A stretch of 64,000 nt of DNA from Macrostomum hystrix (lineage: Eukaryota; Animalia; Platyhelminthes): positions 8,370,001 to 8,434,000 of the forward strand of contig CATNEN010000003.1 of the NCBI GenBank assembly GCA_950097015.1, in the 5' to 3' direction. This document shows, piece by piece, positions 23-10,574 of this stretch. The notes beneath the pieces were generated by a model. That model was not told the DNA's origin, did no database searches, and saw nothing but the letters and a program-made list of their open reading frames with translations. The position numbers were made by a program, and so were the translations under genes. Within the stretch, counting starts at the first letter, position 1. Each line of letters begins with the position of its first letter.

Positions 23-2484
23 TTAAAAATCGCGAAGACTTACAACTTCAAAGGGCACTGGCACGGCAAAGAATTGCACGTTCGGTTGGCTACTCCCGCC
101 GCCACCATCGCGGCGTCCGCCTCGGTGACGATTTCGTCGTTGAGCCGCCCGTTCGGCTTCCTCGATGTCCTCCTGAAGGCGAGTCTTCTCCCGGCGTTGC
201 TTCCGAGCTGTGGCATCGATCTGCAAATGAACGAAATAAATTTTCGTTGGAATTTTAATTATTTTTAATGCATCCCGATAAGCACGTAATATTCATCACT
301 TTTTTCGATACATATCGGATTGACATATCCGATATATGTACAATGCGATATATACATATCGCATTGTACAACTATATTTTTTCAAAGCAGTGTAACTGAT
401 AGGCATGATGATCACTTGTAAGTTCGTGGCCTAGTGGTTGAAGCCTCGGTACAGACCGAGAGGTCGGGATTTCGAATTTCAGACAAAAGAGATAAAGACA
501 AATTATGTGCTCAAGCTGGACACTGTACTCCTTAATGCTTGATGCTTCCTTAATGCCTCATTTCGATGTAAGATAAGTGCCTTTGTCCCCAACCCCAGTC
601 CACAGGCTGAAAAGCTCATAGCCGCTCAAAAGGTGCAGCTGTGCCACCAGCATATATACAGTTTTCTATACATATCGGATCAAAGCATCTCGTTATGATA
701 TAGACTTTCACCTGCTTCTCAAGCGATGCGATTCGGGTCTCAGCCTTGTCTAGCAGCTGGTACAGTTCCAGACGCTCCGAACTCTCCATGCCGTTTCTTT
801 TCTGCTGCTGGCTGGCCTTCACAGACGCCATCTCGTCGCGCAGCTTCCGATTCTCCTCCATCAGCGCCTTCGCCCGCTGGTCGTCGTCGCGTCCGGCTGC
901 GTTGCGCCGATCGCGCAGCAGTCGCTCCATGCGCTCAATGACCTTCTCCTGTTTGGCGCAGGCTTCCTCCAGACTGCGCTGCTTGGCTACTCGCTCTTGA
1001 AGACGCTGAAGCAGACGCTGTTGAGATTCGTGAGCGTCTGCTAGTCGTTCCATACCAGTCTCTGTCTGATTGCCAGCGATCAGCTCGTTCTGAAGCCGAT
1101 GTACCCGATCCTTGTACTGTTGCAGTTGGGCCACGCTGCCCCGCAGGTTCTGGCGCAGGGCGACTGCAAAGGCCCAGGTTTTCACGGGATGTTTGGTGAT
1201 TTTACGGCAGCTGGGCTATAAAGCTGTGCATATGGGGGGATCGGATCAGGAATAAATGAGAGCTCGGATTAAGGGGAAATGGAAATATTAAAATTATGCT
1301 TGATTAAACGATTCTTCATTAGATGAGAACGAATAATTAGTGATAAATGAGAACGAAATAATAATAATCAATAAGACAGGGGCGTTGCCAGGAGGGGGCA
1401 CAGAAGCCACGCCCACTAACGGCTGACGAAACTTTAGGCAGCGCGGCGTCCCCTGGTAGTGGCGCCCCCTGGTAGTGGCGCCCCCTGGTAGTGGCGCCCC
1501 CTGGTAGTGGCGCCCCCTGGTAGTGGCGCCCCCTGGTAGTGGCGCCCCCTGGTAGTGGCGCCCCCTGGTAGTGGCGCCCCCTGGTAGTGGCGCCCCCAAG
1601 AGGCGTGCCCCCTCTAAAGGAAAAATCCTGGCTACGCCACAGCTATGAGAACGAATAATGTAGATGAAAACGTTATAACGAAATATATTTGGTTTTAGGA
1701 ATGATTAACGCAAACCATGACAGATAAGAGGATAAGAGTCCTCATTACCGTATCGCGCCATGAGCTCAGCCCTGGGAATGCCATCCAACTCGACGCTATC
1801 CTGCAGTATTTTCGATGCATCCGAATAGCTTCCAAGATCGCGCCTGAGCGCTGAATTTTCCATCTCCAGCTCGCGCACCCGATCTCGCAGGGCCAGAATG
1901 TCTTGACCCATCTTGCGCAGAGCGTCGCGATATTTTTCAATCTCGCCCAGCTGTCCGTCCAGTTGAGCAATGTAGTCGGGTCCGTAGTTGTGCAACTTTG
2001 GCACTAGGGCGTTGCTAAGTGGCGCGGCGGCTGCAGCCGCAGCCTGTGGTCGACGGGCGGTGCCGGGACCCGCGGGGAAGATATAGTCATAGTCTGCAAG
2101 TGCGCCTGCCGGCAGAGGCGTGGAGCCGGCCGCATCTGGCAGGTCGCCGTCTGTGATTGGCTGACGTGGCGGAGTGAAGTTGGAGATGACGTGTGCGTAA
2201 GAGATCTGATTGGCTCGAATAGCCTTTTTTGTTTCGAAAATTCATCTGCTAATTTTGATCAGGTCTTAAATGCTCGTACATGCATTTTAAAATTAAATGC
2301 AGTTTAATTTGGCCATAGAATTTGGATATTTTCAATATAACCTGACCATTGCCTCAAAAACTCAGTCTGGCCATAGACTATCGAAGCTTAAAACTATCAA
2401 TGTCTGTAAAACAATTTCCTCGAAAAAGAATCAAGTTTTCACACTTACATCGCTGGTATATGGTCGATAGTACAAGGTTGCCAT
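23..2484 (-). CDS. CCDC33: CCDC33-like coiled-coil protein; inferred exons 2484-2449, 2205-1749, 1163-712, 220-(44 or stop at 23)
   Basis: Peptides EIEKYRDALRKMGQDILALRDRVRELEMENSALR, LQNELI, LEEACAKQEKVIERMERLL and LLDKAETRIASLEKQ resemble the CCDC33 C-terminal coiled coil. GT-AG junctions join in frame. The 5' and 3' ends are uncertain; a possible extra 30-nt exon lies at 3976-3947. Confidence 0.7.
420..560 (+). mobile_element. degenerate tRNA-derived SINE head in intron
   Basis: A-box TGGCCTAGTGG and degenerate B-box ATTTCGAATTTC; similar to 39170-39280. Confidence 0.4.
1377..1642. mobile_element. MITE carrying a 17-bp minisatellite (CTGGTAGTGGCGCCCCC, ~1449-1597)
   Basis: Imperfect terminal inverted repeats CAGGGGCGTTGCCAGGA / TCCTGGCTACGCCACAG; about 9 internal tandem units. 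Confidence 0.65.
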
Positions 2485-4057
2485 AGTACTATAGGAACGA
2501 CCAAATCAGATTAAGATTGTATTCCTTGGTTTCTTGGTTTTCCTTCTCTTTGTTGTCTTTTCTTAATTTCTGATTTTATGCGTCATATAAAAACACGATC
2601 GCCTTTGCTTTAAAATTAATTTTCTGTCCAGAACTATAGGAGAGGCAGAAGCACAGTCTGTTTGGTTTGTGCTGCGAGAAAAAGAGAAAAATGCTGGCCT
2701 TCTATTAAAAGACGCCAAGAAGAGTTGCTCTTCTGTGCTCTAAAAGATACGCTGGGCGCTATGTGTGCGCAATGTGCACACACCTTTTTAAGCTTAGAGT
2801 GACCAAATTATTCTTTGCGGAGTATAGGAGTGTACACAAACAGTGTACTCAGCACCTTGAATCTTTCGCTTCGCTTTTCTCTCTGTCCCTCTCCCTCTTG
2901 ATCCTTCTGTAGTCATGGGATACGCTTTAGCCCTATAAACATTGCAACATAAGCATGCATAATTATGGGATCTTATATAATGGTTTGGGAATTTACGAGC
3001 GTAGTTTGTTTGCAAAATTCCAACTCCACAGCATATTTGCAGATATAGAAAAGAAGGAAATGAGAATTTCAGTTGTCTGCTATGGGTAGCTTTGAAAACG
3101 TTATCTCATTCTGTCAATACTTGTGCGATAGGCTATACGTTAAAGATAAATCTGCAGCGCATGCATGCCTACTTATAGTAATGCAAATCTTGACAGTTTT
3201 TAGAAAGTGAAAAATCTTGATCCCTTTTATCAATCGAATATAGCCCGAGTAAGTATGGATTGGACAGTCAAAATTATAGGGTTGGAGATTTTAGTTAAGT
3301 GTAGAGTGGAGAGTGGAGATTTTGAAGAGCGGAGAGTGGAGATTGTGTAGAGTGAGGTTGAGATGGTCTAAAGTGGAGGGTGAAAAATTTGGTTACATTT
3401 TTTCTCTAACGTGCCATGAATACTAACGCAGCACTATAAATAATACGCTAATATTATTATTAATTATTAATAAATAATTTGTCTAATTTACGGTACTTTT
3501 GAGGCAACTCAGTGAGCTGATGAGAACCAATTAGCTGCACTTCGATCTGCGTCTGCATAAGCTTTTTTGTTGCATTAAAAAGTGAAGAATAAAGTCAATA
3601 AAGGGCGATTACATCAAGAAGCATATGGGGCAATGGGCACACGAGTTGGTTAAAGACTGATAAAATAGTTTCAAGTTCTAACCACTGGAAATTGTCTTCT
3701 TTAGCCAGCTGAAATCTAATTTGTTATTCAATTTCTATGACAAAGAGAGTCTGACTTGTCTAATACTAACAGTAGTGCTATTTGCACATTTTCATTCCGC
3801 TTGTATAGTATAGCAAATTTATGTAGCTTCTATATATTTAGCCTTTAGGAAACTATAGATTGGCTTCTCTTAGAGTTAGTCTCTAAAATAGCAGTAATGT
3901 TTTCATTCATTAATAAAAATCAACAGTTTTCAGAAACTTTACTTACTTGTTTAGGTCGAATTCGGCATCTGAGGCTCTGCAACACGAAAAGTAGTATAAT
4001 AAGAATTAATGTTAACCGTTAATCAAAAACAAAATGCAGCATTAACATTTTCCCTTT

Positions 4058-4248
4058 ATCGCTTCTCGGCCTTATTGGCTAAGATCAAAGTGTAGTTTCT
4101 GTTCTTTTGAGATTAATACCTCAAACGTAGACCATTGGTCTACTACGTTATTAATCCAGTTTTTGTGGAATCGGGCCAGTGCTTCGTGTTCACACGACCT
4201 GGTCCACGCGTAGGCCTTGCGCTGCAGTACAGCAAGGATCTGCGCATC
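4058..4248 (+). ncRNA. U2: U2 spliceosomal snRNA (variant branch-point recognition sequence)
   Basis: Starts ATCGCTTCTCGGCCTTATTGGCTAAGATCAAAGTGTAGTTTCTGTTCTT; stem IIa TTGAG..CTCAA, stem IIb GTAGACC..GGTCTAC, Sm-like AGTTTTTG, stem IV loop CTGCAGT; about 190 nt. Confidence 0.93.
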
Positions 4249-4793
4249 TAAGAAATACAAAAATAAACCGAGCGGGCAGCGTAAAACACCCTTCTGTAAA
4301 ATCCTTGGAAATAAGTGTTAAGCCGTATACTTTCATTTCACTGAGACGCTCACAAGAAACGAAATTGGTGTGTTTTTATACAAGCCTACGTACGCATTAC
4401 TAGTAAAAAAGTTTCTTGCTTTAGCAGTTAACTAATTTTTTTCCAAACTAATTTACAATATTAGATTTGAATTCAATCGAATACTTATGCAACTTAAATA
4501 TAAGACTGTTGAAAAATACATTTTGTCATTCCTCATAATTTTTACTATAATAAAAAACTTTTTTATTATACTTTCCTAATTATTATAAAAAAGACTGGAA
4601 CACAAGTAAAGACGAAAACATTTTAAAGTACTAACAAAAAATTTTTATATAGAATTTCTATTATATTTATACATACCGACTGTGGCTCCACGCAAATATT
4701 AAGTCCAGTTTTAAAACTGGAAGTAAAAGCGCTTCATGCTTTGGTAGAAAAAACTACCAATATGCCTAAATAAAAAGGGCTGTTTTCCAAAAA

Positions 4794-4829
4794 CTTCTCG
4801 GCCTTATTGGCTAAGATCAAAGTGTAGTT
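4794..4829 (+). pseudogene. U2 snRNA 5' fragment (36 nt) fused to downstream element
   Basis: Identical to 4062-4097 and stops at the branch-point recognition sequence; upstream flank differs from that of the full U2 gene. Confidence 0.9.
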
Positions 4830-5700
4830 GATCTTACCGGAAACATCGGCAACACAACAATGGCAACAGCATCGACCAGCCTGGAACAACAACACGACAG
4901 CGTCGACGAAGACGAAGAAGGAGACAGGCAACCCAACAGCCAACCAACGCGTACCGCCTGCCCAGCCTGTGGAAAGCTCCTCACCATCAAAGGACTACCA
5001 CGCCACCTCAAAGCCTGTCGAGAACGCCACTTACAAGCCGGAGACATCACTGGCGCCGACCGGGCGGCTAGCGCAATGGACGGCCAGCATCGTTGTCCCC
5101 ACTGCAGAGCGACCTTCGCCAGGCTTGCTAAACACATCAGCACCTGCCCAGCTGCTCCTGCCAGCAGAACCGCCCAGCGCAGGAAAGCCCCGTCGGAGGA
5201 GACCACAAATGCGACAGATGCGGCGCGGAATTCGGCACGGCACGCGCCCGCAACATCCACGCCGCCAGGTGCAGGCCAAAGACGACGCCGAGCTAACGAA
5301 CGCAGTCGCATGCCGGCACTGCCACATGATCATCTCCAGCGCCAGATGGGCACGGCACGCGACCCTTTGCGCCACGAGACGGGGAGCCCCGGCAGCAGCA
5401 GCGGCACCTACGGCGGCGGCAGCGGCTCCAGCAGTCCCTGCCGTCTCAGCAGCACCAGCGACAGCGACACCAACAACACCAACGGCGGTGGCGTCAGCGG
5501 CAGCACCGGTAGCGGCCGTGACAGCAGCAGCACCGACGGCGGAGGCGGCGGCGACAGCGACACCCGCGACTCCAACAGCACCCGCGGCGCCAGCTCCAGA
5601 GGCACCAACTACGGCCGCGGCGGCAGCATGCCTCCAAGCGATCGCCAACCTACCTGAGGACGACGCAACAGCCTGGCCGGCGTTCTGCACCGCCTGCGAT
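4830..5700 (+). mobile_element. 5' fragment of putative U2-targeting retrotransposon (Utopia/NeSL-like); zinc-finger ORF from ATG 4860, frameshifted near 5270-5290, truncated at ~5700
   Basis: Three C-x2-C..H-x3-C fingers (CPACGKLLTIKGLPRHLKAC, CPHCRATFARLAKHISTC, CRHCHMIISSARWARHATLC) followed by an Ala/Thr/Pro linker; GC-rich island starting at the U2 junction; no RT visible. Confidence 0.6.
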
Positions 5701-6435
5701 TTATCCTGTTATCGCAGGATAAATATGCGAACTTTTGCATGTAATATTCGGGATGTTTTTGGAAAACAAAGGTGAAATAATGCACGTCTTGCCGTCAAAA
5801 TAACGAAAAAACTTAGCAGAAGCGATAGAAAAACTGCTATCAAAGTAAAAATTGCGAAAAGATTATACTAAGGAGAAAAAGCATTTTATGCTATGTCAAA
5901 ATGACACCTACGTTGATCTCAGCCGATATTAAGTCAGTAAAAATTCAATCGGTTATAAAAATATTAACAAATTAACAACTACAGATTCGATTTTTCGCTG
6001 AAATTTATATTTGCTAGAATAATGGCTTTTCAATAATTCACAAATATTGTTAATAACGGCATTAAGTTTAAACAAAACGCATGCAAATGATATAGTCGAT
6101 ATTGTCTACTTCCTATTCTCTACTTCTCATTCTCAACTAAACTCTATACTGAACTACTGAGCACGGAGTAGCAGACGACCCTAGTATCGATGTCAAACTA
6201 GATGCCACAGAGGAATTTGATCAGTTTGATGCATAGCAACAACATATCAAAAAGAGCAGACGGAAAAAAGCAGGCCTGTACCTAACTTCGTGGCCCCGCA
6301 CAATTATCGATCGCTTTCGAGTGAGGACACCGGGACTTCTTTTTCCACTGTCATTTGATCAAAAACAAGCCCAAGCAAGAAATGCGGCATGCGCAATCTA
6401 GTTGTACTCATTAGTCTGCGTGACACCAACTGAAT

Positions 6436-6517
6436 GCCAATAAGGCCAAGAACCAACACCCACATTGATCTTAGCCAATAAGGCCGAAAAGCGACACCCA
6501 CATTGATCTCAGCCAAT
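6436..6517 (-). repeat. 38-bp tandem repeat of U2 snRNA 5'-end sequence (antisense on + strand); related copy at 5903-5928
   Basis: 6465-6494 reverse-complements to TCGCTTTTCGGCCTTATTGGCTAAGATCAA (29/30 match to U2 nt 2-31); motifs recur at 6436/6474 and 6465/6503. Confidence 0.85.
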
Positions 6518-7111
6518 TGCACTTTACAAGCATCGAATGTATGTTTCCCATGGGCCCATATTTGACAGACTTTTTAGACGGAGCCAGGTTAACGAAAACT
6601 AGTTACTTTTCTTCAATCACAACAAATCGTTCTTTCTCAGATTCCTCCGCACCTCAGATCCCTGCACATCCTAAACCACAGATCCCATATCTCAGAAAAT
6701 ACATCCAATATGGGACAGCTGATCCTACATCCGAGATCCTATATCTCATTCGACAGACCTTAGATCTCAAATCGCAGATCCTGAATCGCACATTCTGAAT
6801 CGTGATCGAAAAAGCCCTTTCAAGTTCCAATGAACCCGAATAATAATAGAGAGCGGAGGGACAGGATTTTGAAGTGTCTGGGTGGGGTCTCACAATGAGT
6901 CATGCTCATTGGATTGTCTACACTGCTCTTACCAACACTTTGCAAAACGATGCTGCGGAAGCAACGACTGAAAAGACTGAAGAGCCATAAAGAAAACGAT
7001 TGGACATTGAGGCCTTGGCAACAAGACATTGAGACACGCTTAGAAGACACAGGGGAGAGGTGAGACGGACAAAAAAGTAAAGGGGAGAAATGAGAGAGGC
7101 ATGAGAGAGTC

Positions 7112-7425
7112 TTGGTTGTCTAGCAGTCTTGGGTGTCTAACAGTATTGGGTGTCTAACAGTATTGGGTGTCTAACAGTATTGGGTGTCTAACAGTATTGG
7201 GTGTCTAACAGTATTGGGTGTCTAACAGTAATTGGGTGTCTAACAGTATTGGGTGTCTAACAGTATTGGGTGTCTAACAGTATTGGGTGTCTAACAGTAT
7301 TGGGTGTCTAACAGTATTGGGTGTCTAACAGTATTGGGTGTCTAACAGTATTGGGTGTCTAACAGTATTGGGTGTCTAACAGTATTGGGCGTCTAACAGT
7401 ATTGAGTGTCTAACAGTATTGGGTT
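7112..7425. repeat. 17-bp minisatellite (CAGTATTGGGTGTCTAA)n
   Basis: About 18 tandem units. Confidence 0.95.
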
Positions 7426-7499
7426 AACTCCCCCCTCCTGCCTCCTCCCCTCCCCCTCCCTCCACCTCGGCCCCTTCCTTTCCTCCCCTCCCCAGGCCC

Positions 7500-8932
7500 C
7501 TCCCCACCCTTTCCGCAGTCCCGTCCCCGTCCATAACTGCTACGTCCCACCAGCCAGCTCCTGTCCTGCCGAGCACCAACTTGACCCTGCGTCCTTCCTG
7601 GAAGACACCTCGCACGGGACTCACCTTGTCGTTGGCGACTTCAATGCGCACAAGGTTCTCTGGCACTTGCCCCTCTCCGACTCCAGGGGAGATCTTTTGG
7701 CGGAATTCCTCTTGGAACAAGGCGTCGCTGTCCTCAACGAAGATGCTCCCACGCGGCTACTCCAGTCCGGGCAGCCAACCTCCCCGGACATCAGCCTCGC
7801 CAACCTCGACATCTTCTTGTCCTGTGAATGGGAGACCCTTGTCACGCTAGGCTCGGACCACCTCCCATTCTGCTTACTATCAACACCGTGGAGTCCCCGG
7901 TGCCAGCTACTCAACACTCCTTTGTCAACTTCAAGAAGGCAAATTGGGAGAAACTCACCACTGAATGTGAAGACCTGTTTGAGAAGCTTCCTGCTCCCAG
8001 GCATCCTCATCCTGGAGAGAAAGCCTTCAGGCAGGCTATCCTTCAAGCAGCTAAGCACCACATCCCAGCTGGGAAACTTCAACATTTTCGTCCCCACTTC
8101 CCGCCGGAAGCCGACGCCCTCTGCAAGCAAAGAGACCTCATTCGCACGGATAACCCTCACGGAAGCTATCACCATCATTCAAGACGAAATCAACCAGATC
8201 TGCTCCAAATTTCGCCGGGCGAACTGGAGGGTAAAGCTTGAGCAGTTCAGCATCAAGCACCAGGTCTCTGAACTGTGGCGAACCATCAAGAACCTCAGCG
8301 GTAAAGGCCACAAAAAAAACTCCGCTGGCATCCTTTTTGACGAGCTTCCTTTAACTGATTCCAAACGCATTGCCAAGGCCTTCAACAGGCAGTTCTTTGA
8401 TCAAATTCATCCGGCCACCCCGGACGACAGACGCCTCAAAAGGGACATCAGACTTTACCCCACCAATGGCTTCCTGCTCACGTCCAAGGGACGTCACGTC
8501 GGCCATCAAAAGCTCTTCGCCGTCCAAAGCCACCGGACCGGATGGCCTTTCCCCCATCGTCCTGAAGCATCTTGGACCAAAGGGAATTGCCTTCCTCTGC
8601 TGCCTATTCAATCTGAGCCTTAGCACCAGTATCGTTCCTAGCACCTGGACATCTGCCAAGGTAGTGCCTCTTCTCAAAGGGACAAAGATGCTACCTGCAG
8701 CTCCTCCTACAGGCCAATCTCGATCCTTTCTCCAGCCGCCAAATTGCTGGAAAATTGCCTGCTGTCCACCTTTCAGAGCGCACTTCCGCTCCCCACCTGG
8801 CAGCATGGCTTCCGCGCGGGGCACTCCACCGCCACCGCCCTCACCAGCCTCACCAGCTCCATCAGCAACGGCCTTAACCAACCTAAACCTGCTGAGAGGA
8901 CTCTGCTCATCGCACTCGATCTGCAAAAAGCG
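7500..8932 (+). mobile_element. decayed non-LTR retrotransposon ORF2 (APE endonuclease + N-terminal half of RT)
   Basis: EN motifs NCYVPP, VVGDFNAH, LNEDAPTR, SPDISL, GSDHLP; RT motifs KATGPDGLS, AKVVPLLK, QHGFRAGHST, LIALDLQKA; several frameshifts; breaks off at RT motif A. Confidence 0.92.
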
Positions 8933-9539
8933 TAGAAGGTGTATTCTGCACCGATATTGCATGAAAGACATCAAGGTCAACAAGCAGCCTGTGAAACTCC
9001 AGGTGCAGACTGAACAACCTACTACGGAGGTCTTTACGACACCTGCCTCAAGCCCTGCTCTGGCCTCTGGTCCATTCAGGCAGTCATCTAGATCATCATC
9101 CACTCCTCCAGTTCTCCGACATGCCAACCGCAGGTCATTGGACCAATTAATGTAGACACTCCTTACGGTCTTGGAACTGCCGAAGGACTACTGCGTCCCG
9201 CTAGCAGCCAGGTAGACAGTCCCTACAGCGGTCTGTTGGATCACCAAGCTGTCGAATCCGAAACAGAGATGGAGGTGGATGCTAAAGCAATTGCTAGTTG
9301 TAACACACTAAAAGTGGGGAACGAACCTCGCGCTGGCAGACCGAGACCGGTTTCTGGCTTGTTTGCCTTCGTCAGTCAGCCATAGCCACACGCAGTCCTC
9401 TCCCACCACTCTTAGTGTGCACAGAAGTCTCTTTCAAGCTTGCCATTTTTATGGCGATATTTTTTAGTGTTATTGAGAGTTTTGCAGCCAAGTCTTTGCT
9501 TTTCTACTGTTGTCAGTAGTCTGAATTGTATCTCTCACA

Positions 9540-9885
9540 CTAGTTCAGCATATCCAGAACTCACATGTGACGTCACAGATGCAAAATTTAGCAACCACGA
9601 AGGTGACTGCCTTGTGAACTACTATCCTAAACTCCTAGCTGATCAAGAAGACCTACTGTACCAGCGAATAGTCCGTGTGATGTCCTGTCGCTCGCCATTT
9701 AGACATCGCCCACAAGAAGTTATGATGAAGACGAAATCAGACCTTGGGCTTTCATACACTGCCTGCATGGATCACTCATCATCATGGCCGGTGCCTGCCA
9801 GCGTAAATTACTCCACTCGGTACCTGCAGTCACCGATCATGAAGGCTTACGAATCTCGCTGATCTTCAGGCGTACTGAAGTTATC
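9540..9885 (+). pseudogene. decayed AlkB-family 2OG-Fe(II) dioxygenase domain
   Basis: DCLVNYY..ADQE then, in another frame, LHGSLIIMAGACQRKLLHSVP..RISLIFRR, matching the ALKBH2/3-type C-terminal signature. Confidence 0.7.
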
Positions 9886-10574
9886 ATCAGGCCTCCAAAA
9901 AGACCGGACATAGACAGCATGAGCCCAATCGTCCAGCCAGCGGCGACATCTGAGCGACCAGGCAGTGGTGCGGCGAACTACGGCCCCGCCGCACCTGGCA
10001 GCTCTGGCAAGTCCAATCAGCCAGCTCAAAAGCAACAGCGCCAAGTTCCGATGACCAAGCCAAAGACCTATGCCAACACTGCAGCCGCTGCCAGGCCGAC
10101 GAAGCCATCGTAAAACAATGTCGAAAATAGTGGTTTTTGCCACCAGACACACCAACGAGAATAGTTGATAATCTCGATGATGACGATATTCTGTGATTCT
10201 GGGAGTTGTTTCATCGGATAGAGAAACAATTTTAGTTCATTGTCAATTGTCCATCCATAACTTCAGAAGTCCTTCTCGGTGGTGTTCGAGTCAGCCAGAC
10301 TGGAAGACTGCATCAACGATTTCCAAGTGCGTCGATTTCTTGCCAGCCGTCATTCCTGCTGATCCCGCGGAGCCTGGCCAATCAGCACGGACTGCTTCAA
10401 CTCACAGACCCGGCTGAAATTCATCGCACAGAACATTGCCAGCCTCGTGAGTTACGCCGCCAGTACTCACTCGAACTGGAAGCCAAAAAGCTATGCAAGC
10501 CTCCTTGCACAATTCGACCCGGAAACTGCTCCGGAGTTCCTGCTTAATCATCTGCTAAATTAATAAATTTATTC

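What the first reader, a model, noticed from the sequence alone, without database searches (positions are those of the whole stretch)
5903..6517. Antisense array of U2 5' ends with a 38-bp period downstream of the U2-fused element
Seen: 6436-6517 holds one complete and two partial head-to-tail units. Read on the minus strand, the unit is GTCGCTTTTCGGCCTTATTGGCTAAGATCAATGTGGGT, i.e. U2 from its first nucleotide to about the same point where the element junction lies. A fourth partial copy is at 5903-5928. A + strand transcript would be complementary to U2 stem I and to the element's own U2 head at 4794, so the two form an inverted pair around the ORF. Inference: these could be scars of repeated reverse transcription or template jumping on cleaved U2 targets, decoy target sites, or an element-borne antisense guide to U2. 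I know of no description of such an array.
Basis: partly seen in the sequence, partly recalled or inferred. Interest (0 to 1): 0.82.

Follow-up and report, generated by a model that had tools for sequence, protein, structure and literature searches.

The report
U2 5'-end minisatellite at Utopia relics
A short tandem array of copies of the first 38 bases of the U2 splicing-RNA gene occurs only beside this genome's U2 genes and the decayed remains of a U2-targeting jumping gene. It is most likely a scar of sloppy retrotransposon integration, not an antisense guide carried by the element.

Summary
Positions 6436-6517 hold a 38-bp tandem repeat whose minus strand is U2 nt 1 to about 39.

It is larger than reported. 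Units run 6423-6517. A truncated hAT-like transposon (5936-6422) splits the array, and 5895-5941 is its continuation. An abundant repeat whose terminus is at 6518 cuts the far end.

The array is not unique. Homologous arrays sit at all three main-type U2 loci of this 220-Mb genome (C3 and two on C35) and nowhere else detectable. All units share G at nt 1 and a rewritten last 6-7 nt, which points to one ancestral unit spread by DNA duplication.

The unit ends are U2 nt 1 (the start of the U2 RNA) and the published Utopia/Keno insertion site. Decayed Utopia-like (RLE-type) fragments lie beside the arrays.

The closest precedent is R2. There, tandem duplications of upstream 28S have a length equal to the distance from the RNA 5' end to the insertion site. 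I read the array as an old by-product of Utopia integration from a U2-headed RNA.

The array lies outside the head+zinc-finger insertion, one array has the opposite orientation, and a third Utopia copy has none. An element-borne antisense guide is therefore not supported. The inverted head arrangement remains unexplained.

The parts
4058..4252 (+). Intact U2 snRNA gene, the source sequence of the repeat unit
   Evidence: Rfam RF00004, 147 bits, E 3e-30, full length
4781..5780 (+). About 1-kb insertion relative to the paralogous empty site in C35b. It holds U2 head nt 5-40 (4794-4829) fused to a Utopia-like 5' end with C2HC zinc-finger ORF pieces, and is bracketed by a 20-nt inverted repeat (4781-4800 / 5749-5768)
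   Evidence: Head is 100% identical to U2 nt 5-40. Empty site: window 4576-4763 and 5775-5860 are contiguous in L031. Inverted repeat I2. One zinc-finger piece weakly matches N-terminal fingers of RLE-type RT proteins
5781..5894 (.). Ancestral U2 downstream flank between the insertion and the array
   Evidence: 79% identical to L031 6193-6107, which follows the same flank at the C35b U2 gene
5895..5941 (-). Array continuation: unit W4 (5906-5941, about nt 6-38) and the first 11 nt of W5 (5895-5905)
   Evidence: Local alignment to the unit, direct-repeat family D2, model R1 hit 5899-5924, alignment A4
5936..6422 (.). Truncated hAT-like DNA transposon fragment that splits the array. It is not part of the array. 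Its left boundary is approximate and overlaps unit W4 by a few bases
   Evidence: Dispersed copies. Full copies L070/L071 have 32-34-bp terminal inverted repeats and 8-bp target duplications. The window copy keeps the right terminus at 6422 and lacks about 170 bp at the left
6423..6457 (-). Unit W3, a full but degenerate unit (first 22 nt clear, last 13 diverged)
6458..6495 (-). Unit W2, the best-preserved 38-nt unit (U2 nt 1 to about 39, with G at nt 1 and a rewritten last 6-7 nt)
6496..6517 (-). Unit W1, nt 17-38 only, cut off by the repeat that begins at 6518
   Evidence: More than 25 genomic copies of the neighbouring repeat begin their homology exactly at 6518

Best explanation
The array is a non-functional relic: a minisatellite whose unit is the part of the U2 gene that lies upstream of the Utopia insertion site (U2 nt 1 to about 39).

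Inferred mechanism. A Utopia-type retrotransposon sitting in a U2 gene is transcribed from the U2 promoter, so its RNA starts with U2 nt 1-39. During target-primed reverse transcription into another U2 copy, the cDNA carries this head. If its end is joined without pairing to the target's own head, or the reverse transcriptase switches template at the RNA 5' end, heads are laid down head to tail, with non-templated or miscopied bases at the joints.

Shown. One such ancestral unit, marked by G at nt 1 and altered final bases, was then amplified and spread with the U2 loci by ordinary DNA duplication. It was inverted in some copies, and later cut by a hAT-like transposon and by LINE-type repeats.
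For: 1. Unit ends. The head-to-tail joint links about nt 39 to nt 1. Nt 1 is the first base of the U2 RNA in the Rfam alignment. Kojima and Jurka place the Utopia and Keno insertion between U2 nt 38 and 39, with TCTGTTC as the 3' flank (PMC4640811). This U2 has two extra bases in its first 31 nt relative to the Rfam U2 consensus, so the site is 40/41 here. It is seen directly at window 4829/4833 (5' junction) and L033 2853/2854 (3' junction).

2. Co-occurrence. A sequence model of the unit dimer hits, at E below 0.01, only the three main-type U2 loci. The 21-mer core gives the same result.

3. Utopia-like relics beside the arrays. L033 1716-2494 and 6130-6378 match the region C-terminal to RVT_1 in 800-1500-aa RT proteins. 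Those proteins have no AP-endonuclease domain, and one has a Ulp1 protease as in the NeSL clade.

4. The head can travel with the element. Head nt 5-40 plus the element's 5' end sits as an insertion in a non-U2 site. No ribozyme was found by Rfam, and only 27 nt separate the head from the ATG.

5. Precedent. R2 5' junctions carry tandem duplications of upstream 28S, up to three copies, of a length set by the RNA 5' end. Substitutions or non-templated bases sit between the repeats (PMC3774820).

6. The positions nearest the joints are the most altered, whereas nt 2-31 are nearly intact in the best-preserved units (W2, a1_u2, a2_u2).

7. An inverted head-to-head joint at L033 3002-3005 also falls within 5 nt of nt 1.
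Against: - No array is followed directly by a sense-oriented Utopia 5' end, which is where the R2-type model puts such duplications. Two arrays abut antisense Utopia 3' parts instead: directly (a2), or through antisense U2 nt 118-41 (a1).
- Because all units share derived bases, the arrays may trace to a single event, so the coincidence of unit ends with nt 1 and the insertion site rests on few independent events.
- Array boundaries in the window (nt 11) and at a2 (nt 29) are out of phase with the unit.
- Transcription of Utopia from the U2 promoter is inferred, not shown.
- Searches of the whole genome score only the best candidates, so very decayed arrays elsewhere could be missed.
Confidence: 0.5

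Rival explanations
1. Purely DNA-level origin. Repeated double-strand breaks made by the Utopia endonuclease in clustered U2 copies, some of them convergent, were repaired by end joining, slippage or unequal exchange. This gave tandem and inverted head fragments with no RNA template for the heads.
For: Shared derived bases in all units show that DNA duplication spread the arrays. Arrays are joined to varied partners: U2 nt 118 antisense, Utopia 3' UTR antisense, and U2 downstream flank. The loci are heavily rearranged and full of transposons.
Against: A DNA break model explains the unit end at nt 38-40 but not the other end at nt 1, where the RNA starts. The same nt 1 region is also the centre of an inverted head joint.
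Confidence: 0.25
2. U2-derived satellite serving as an extra or decoy target. The head-to-head joint recreates the upstream half of the target, and partly the downstream half, so the endonuclease could bind or cut it. This would resemble the U2_sat repeats hit by YURE elements in Ciona.
For: U2 nt 2-9 resembles nt 41-48 (6 of 8; read), so the joint mimics the site. The paper reports insertions into U2-derived satellites. Utopia fragments lie next to two arrays.
Against: No Utopia copy sits in sense orientation inside an array joint. The units are few and decaying. The elements are dead.
Confidence: 0.12
3. Element-borne antisense U2 guide or regulatory RNA. A + strand transcript through the array pairs with U2 stem I or with the element's own U2 leader.
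For: 31-nt, 94% complementarity between 4794-4824 and 6461-6491. The order sense head, Utopia fragment, antisense heads recurs at L033 6053-6523.
Against: The array lies outside the insertion that holds the ORF. The C35b array has the same orientation as its U2 gene. The C33 Utopia copy has no heads at its 3' end. The array is broken by two transposons. There is no intact element and no conservation of the units.
Confidence: 0.05

Closest known systems
Tandem duplications of upstream 28S rDNA at R2 5' junctions (Eickbush et al. 2013, PMC3774820)
   Same: The repeat unit is the target segment between the 5' end of the template RNA and the insertion site. There can be one to three head-to-tail copies, with substitutions or non-templated bases at the joints. 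The host element is an RLE-type, site-specific non-LTR element.
   Different: In R2 the copies sit directly 5' of a sense element, and their length (13-28 nt) is set by a ribozyme cut. Here the unit would be set by the U2 RNA start (38 nt). The arrays are detached from any sense 5' end, partly inverted, and duplicated between loci.
Utopia, U2-gene-specific non-LTR retrotransposons of the NeSL clade (Kojima and Jurka 2015, PMC4640811)
   Same: Same insertion site in U2 (3' flank starts TCTGTTC). N-terminal zinc fingers. The RT-downstream region is homologous to RLE-type elements lacking an AP endonuclease. Copy number is low and confined to U2 loci.
   Different: The paper reports tandem elements and, in oomycetes, loss of U2 nt 1-38. 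It does not mention head-to-tail arrays of nt 1-38 or a U2 promoter or co-transcript (no occurrence of those words). Its host list (Table 1) has no flatworm. Earlier notes of this scan call this genome a flatworm; I did not test that.
U2_sat, U2-derived satellite of Ciona hit by YURE elements (mentioned in PMC4640811)
   Same: A tandem repeat derived from U2 gene sequence and associated with Utopia-related elements.
   Different: The unit structure of U2_sat is not given in the text I could read, so no comparison of unit ends was possible. Here the arrays have only 2-7 units.
snRNA/LINE chimeric retrocopies made by template switching (U6/L1 type; from my own knowledge, not checked here)
   Same: A reverse transcriptase switching between a LINE RNA and an snRNA gives snRNA pieces joined to LINE pieces.
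   Different: Those chimeras are dispersed single copies with a full snRNA in sense orientation 5' of a truncated L1. They are not tandem 5' fragments at the snRNA gene locus.

Membership tests
Utopia (NeSL-clade U2-specific non-LTR retrotransposon), for the neighbouring element fragments | Insertion at U2 nt 38/39 of the consensus numbering, with 3' flank starting TCTGTTC | tested here: met
   L033 2853|2854: element 3' end followed by U2 nt 41-112(-118), starting TCTGTTC. Window 4829-4833: U2 nt 5-40 followed by the element 5' end. Site as published.
Utopia (NeSL-clade U2-specific non-LTR retrotransposon), for the neighbouring element fragments | RT followed by a zinc finger and a restriction-like endonuclease, with no AP endonuclease | tested here: inconclusive
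   The L033 fragments match the region after RVT_1, and the extreme C-terminus, of 800-1500-aa RT proteins that show no Exo_endo_phos domain; one has Ulp1. The PD..D/ExK motif itself could not be read in the frameshifted copy.
Utopia (NeSL-clade U2-specific non-LTR retrotransposon), for the neighbouring element fragments | One to three N-terminal zinc fingers | tested here: met
   Window 4860-5400 holds four Cys2-His-Cys-type fingers spread over shifted frames. There is a weak Pfam C2HC hit. The word search found no relatives.
Utopia (NeSL-clade U2-specific non-LTR retrotransposon), for the neighbouring element fragments | Placement inside the Utopia clade in an RT tree | not tested
   No named Utopia sequences were available in the tools, and the RT core is missing from the U2-linked copies.
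R2-type tandem duplication of the upstream target at the 5' junction | Unit equals the target segment from the template RNA 5' end to the insertion site | tested here: met
   The unit is U2 nt 1 to about 39, and the joint is about nt 39 to nt 1, in four arrays. That the template RNA begins at U2 nt 1 is inferred.
R2-type tandem duplication of the upstream target at the 5' junction | Copies lie directly upstream of a sense-oriented element 5' end | tested here: not met
   In the sense direction the arrays are followed by antisense U2 flank (window), antisense U2 nt 118-41 plus antisense Utopia (a1), or antisense Utopia 3' UTR (a2).
R2-type tandem duplication of the upstream target at the 5' junction | Substitutions or non-templated bases concentrated at the joints | tested here: met
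   Nt 1 is G in the units whose first base can be read, against A in U2. The last 6-7 nt differ from U2 and differ between arrays (TGTGGGT, TTAGGGT), while nt 2-31 are nearly intact in the best units.
Element-encoded antisense or guide RNA | Constant position and orientation inside the element, and presence in independent copies | tested here: not met
   The array lies outside the insertion. Orientation relative to the U2 gene differs at C35b. The array is absent from the C33 copy.
Element-encoded antisense or guide RNA | Transcription of the + strand | not testable with these tools
   No expression data were available.

The most novel reading that the evidence does not exclude
The heads are cDNA concatemers of free U2 5' fragments (nt 1 to about 39), or of U2-headed Utopia transcripts. 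They would be made by repeated template switching and snap-back of the Utopia reverse transcriptase, primed from whatever 3' ends lay near cleaved U2 genes. The recurring order 'sense head, Utopia fragment, antisense heads' would then record an integration route in which both flanks come from head-side ends of cleaved U2 copies. That would be sequence-level evidence for how a U2-specific RLE element is expressed (Pol II snRNA promoter, U2 leader) and how its integration fails.
Probability: 0.15. Interest if true: 0.6.

Novelty: new variant of a known kind. Interest (0 to 1): 0.38.

Why it matters
How Utopia elements are expressed and how their 5' ends are attached has not been worked out. The paper that defines the family never mentions a promoter or a co-transcript.

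A repeat unit that runs exactly from the U2 RNA start to the insertion site is indirect evidence that the element's RNA begins with the U2 leader, as R2 RNA can begin with 28S sequence. It also shows that the imprecise 5' attachment seen in rDNA elements happens at an snRNA gene too.

The finding further shows how a very small gene family, three or four U2 genes, accumulates debris from its own parasite. The practical value is modest: it gives a testable prediction for species with active Utopia copies.

Tried and rejected
1. I first read 5921-5928 and 6436-6443 as an 8-bp target duplication of the intervening transposon. Comparison with full copies showed that the transposon's right end is at 6422 and its left 170 bp are missing, so I dropped that reading.

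2. I first read the sense head next to array a1 (L033 3005-3023) as only a snap-back product. Its nt 9-23 are one copy of the 15-bp target duplication of a 3-kb LINE (L033 3024-6052), and the other copy is at 6053-6067. The inverted joint near nt 1 remains after the LINE is removed.

3. A junction motif search (GATCAANNNRGGTGTCR) was no better than its reversed control. The two extra exact hits on C24 are chance.

4. Word-index protein searches with the zinc-finger ORF and with the L033 ORF found nothing.

5. The C32 hit to the zinc-finger query is a cellular C2H2 gene, not an element.

6. Extending the 20-nt inverted repeat of the 1-kb insertion into a longer inverted head was not significant. 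The score was 57, against 43.7 +/- 5.1 for shuffles, with a shuffle maximum of 58.

7. The variant U2 gene on C1 is not the source of the unit and has no array.

ORF pieces were always searched apart.

Full report
**Observation**

Tandem Repeats Finder gives a 38-bp period, 2.2 copies and 88% matches at 6436-6517. Read on the minus strand, the full unit (6458-6495) is U2 from its first base. It matches nt 2-31 of the intact U2 gene at 4058-4252 at 96.7%. In alignment A4 it agrees at 29 of the first 31 positions. It differs at nt 1 (G for A) and in the last 6-7 bases.

The sense head at 4794-4829 is U2 nt 5-40 at 100%. It forms a 31-nt, 94% inverted pair with 6461-6491.

This is not chance. The 21-nt core with up to 2 mismatches occurs 8 times in the 220-Mb assembly, the reversed control gives 0, and all hits are in U2 loci.

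**True extent in the window**

- 6423-6457 is a third full but degenerate unit.
- 5936-6422 is a fragment of a dispersed DNA transposon. Full copies (L070, L071) have 32-34-bp terminal inverted repeats and 8-bp target duplications, a hAT-like signature. The window copy keeps the right terminus at 6422 and lacks about 170 bp on the left.
- Left of it, 5906-5941 is another unit and 5895-5905 is the start of the next.
- At the other end, more than 25 genomic copies of a 90%-similar repeat begin their homology exactly at 6518. The first unit, which holds only nt 17-38, was cut by that insertion.
- A full-sensitivity scan finds no further unit in the 64-kb window.

**Elsewhere in the genome**

The exact 38-mer is unique, but homologous arrays exist at three other places:
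- C35:934924-935005 (L033 2924-3005; TRF period 38, 2.2 copies).
- C35:938465-938523 (L033 6465-6523).
- A decayed array of 6-7 units at C35:992132-992356 (L031 4132-4356). It has one more unit at L031 4620-4656 and inverted units at L031 3978-4037.

A sequence-only model of the unit dimer (A3, R1) hits, at E below 0.01, only these places and the U2 genes themselves. These are the three loci that hold the main-type U2 genes: C3:8374058, C35:931521 and C35:994641. The divergent U2 on C1 has no array. One caveat applies: the genome search scores only the best 150 of about 48,000 rough candidates.

Units whose first base can be read begin with G instead of A. Their last bases are rewritten relative to U2. 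The arrays therefore descend from one ancestral unit and were spread by DNA duplication along with the U2 loci. Array-to-array divergence is about 13%. I counted this by eye from alignment A4, comparing unit W2 with unit a1_u2. It is similar to the divergence of the flanks, which are 75-88% identical.

**What lies beside the arrays**

- L033 1716-2494 (+) matches 88 proteins in the 1.8-billion-protein library, with best E 2.5e-12. In long hits, the match falls just after the RVT_1 domain. None of the eight hits examined has an AP-endonuclease domain; one has a Ulp1 protease and one a Myb domain. This is the build of RLE-type (R2/NeSL/Utopia) elements.
- Its 3' UTR ends at L033 2853 and is followed by U2 nt 41-112(-118), starting TCTGTTC. 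This is the published Utopia/Keno site. The numbering is shifted by two because this U2 has two extra bases in its first 31 nt.
- A second fragment, L033 6130-6378, matches the extreme C-terminus of the same proteins.
- The window's zinc-finger ORF (4860-5657 and shifted frames) has four Cys2-His-Cys fingers. One piece weakly matches N-terminal fingers of the same RT proteins.
- Only fragments of this element exist in the genome.
- A third decayed copy on C33 has a 3' UTR but no U2 sequence or head after it.

**Relation of array and element in the window**

The paralogous C35b locus shows the empty site. Window 4576-4763 and 5775-5860 are contiguous there. The head plus zinc-finger ORF is therefore a roughly 1-kb insertion (about 4781-5780) into the U2 downstream flank. 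It is bracketed by a 20-nt inverted repeat. The array begins 115 bp beyond it, in ancestral flank. The array is not part of that insertion or of its 3' UTR.

Orientation is not constant either. The array is antisense to the nearest U2 gene in the window, and sense at C35b.

**Structure at C35a**

I find it at L033 3024-6052. Its duplicated sequence is U2 nt 9-23, at 3009-3023 and 6053-6067.

With this LINE removed, the + strand reads in this order:
1. Utopia 3' part.
2. U2 nt 41-118.
3. Two antisense units.
4. Two bases.
5. Sense head nt 5-36.
6. About 55 bp.
7. 5'-truncated Utopia (end of the ORF plus 92 nt of UTR).
8. Antisense head nt 29-1.
9. An antisense unit.
10. A second LINE copy.

The order 'sense head, Utopia piece, antisense heads' thus recurs. 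A head-to-head inverted joint lies within 5 nt of U2 nt 1.

**Interpretation**

The unit's two ends are U2 nt 1, where the RNA starts, and the Utopia insertion site. A DNA break model explains only the second. An RNA that starts at U2 +1 and runs into the element explains both.

R2 gives the precedent. Where R2 RNA carries upstream 28S sequence, some 5' junctions have tandem duplications of exactly that segment, up to three copies. Substitutions or non-templated bases sit between them, and the duplications can be propagated (PMC3774820). R1 insertions outside rDNA carry 7-28 bp of 28S at the 5' end (PMC2718515), much as the head here travelled to a non-U2 site.

No ribozyme family matches the 5' region, and only 27 nt separate the head from the ATG. 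This fits an RNA that keeps its U2 leader.

I therefore read the array as an old by-product of Utopia integration (confidence 0.5). It was later amplified, inverted and broken by DNA-level events.

The main weakness is that no array now sits 5' of a sense element. The inverted arrangements are unexplained. Template switching with snap-back, or joining of two head-side ends of cleaved convergent U2 copies, are both possible.

**Rivals and novelty**

The rivals are listed separately with their odds: a purely DNA-level origin (0.25), a decoy or extra-target satellite (0.12), and an antisense guide (0.05).

I rate the finding as a new variant of a known kind. Tandem duplication of the upstream target is known for R2. 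The Utopia paper does not report it for U2, and I did not search other literature for it. The detachment and inversion seen here are also unusual.

The sequence is not human. No spliced model was involved. ORF pieces were searched apart. The only model built is of the 38-bp non-coding unit.

Noticed in passing
window 4781-5780: The U2 head plus zinc-finger ORF is a roughly 1-kb insertion relative to the paralogous C35b site. It has AAATAA on both sides and a 20-nt, 90% inverted repeat (4781-4800 / 5749-5768) just inside. A 10-bp-stem hairpin lies at about 5701-5726. [quoted passage not shown] It may be an internally deleted derivative or a foldback product.
   Followed up: partly
window 5936-6422; L070 54-1348; L071 7-1584: A hAT-like DNA transposon family of about 1.3-1.6 kb, with 32-34-bp terminal inverted repeats starting CACAGACC and 8-bp target duplications. 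There are several genomic copies.
   Followed up: partly
window 6518-10110 and beyond: A high-copy repeat (40 or more copies at 88-94%, mostly on contig C39) starts exactly at 6518. It runs through a 17-bp tandem repeat (7108-7424, 18.6 copies) into an AP-endonuclease/RT ORF (7406-8623). Further on, 8948-10110 matches the AlkB-domain LINE of L033 3365-4535.
   Followed up: partly
L033 3024-6052 (C35:935023-938051): A LINE inserted in a U2 head, with a 15-bp target duplication equal to U2 nt 9-23 (3009-3023 and 6053-6067, 13 of 15 identical). A further isolated nt 9-23 fragment lies at L030 6634-6648, next to the zinc-finger ORF fragment.
   Followed up: partly
L030 6666-7055 (C35:930665-931054, minus strand): A second copy of the zinc-finger ORF fragment, 92% identical to window 4921-5308. 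It lies downstream of the C35a U2 gene but has different boundaries and no U2 head at its 5' side.
   Followed up: partly
L072 (C33:1928300-1931300): A third, decayed Utopia-like copy with RT, ORF end and 3' UTR. It is not flanked by recognisable U2 sequence.
   Followed up: partly
L032 6048-6236 (C1:22007041-22007235): A divergent U2 gene, 76% identical to the main type. Loop I reads CCCACAAGG and it has CATTGTG before the branch-site box. It is structurally complete by Rfam (138.7 bits), and no array or Utopia fragment lies nearby.
   Followed up: no
window 1445-1597; L031 4396-4578 and 4714-5000: Near-perfect short tandem repeats lie around the U2 loci: 16 bp x 9.6, 13 bp x 14 and 18 bp x 16.
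   Followed up: no
L033 1164-1715: The ORF that runs into the Utopia 3' fragment starts with about 188 codons. Those codons are 71% identical to ORFs of 523 aa on C39 and C2. This is a different repeated gene fused in frame to the truncated element.
   Followed up: no
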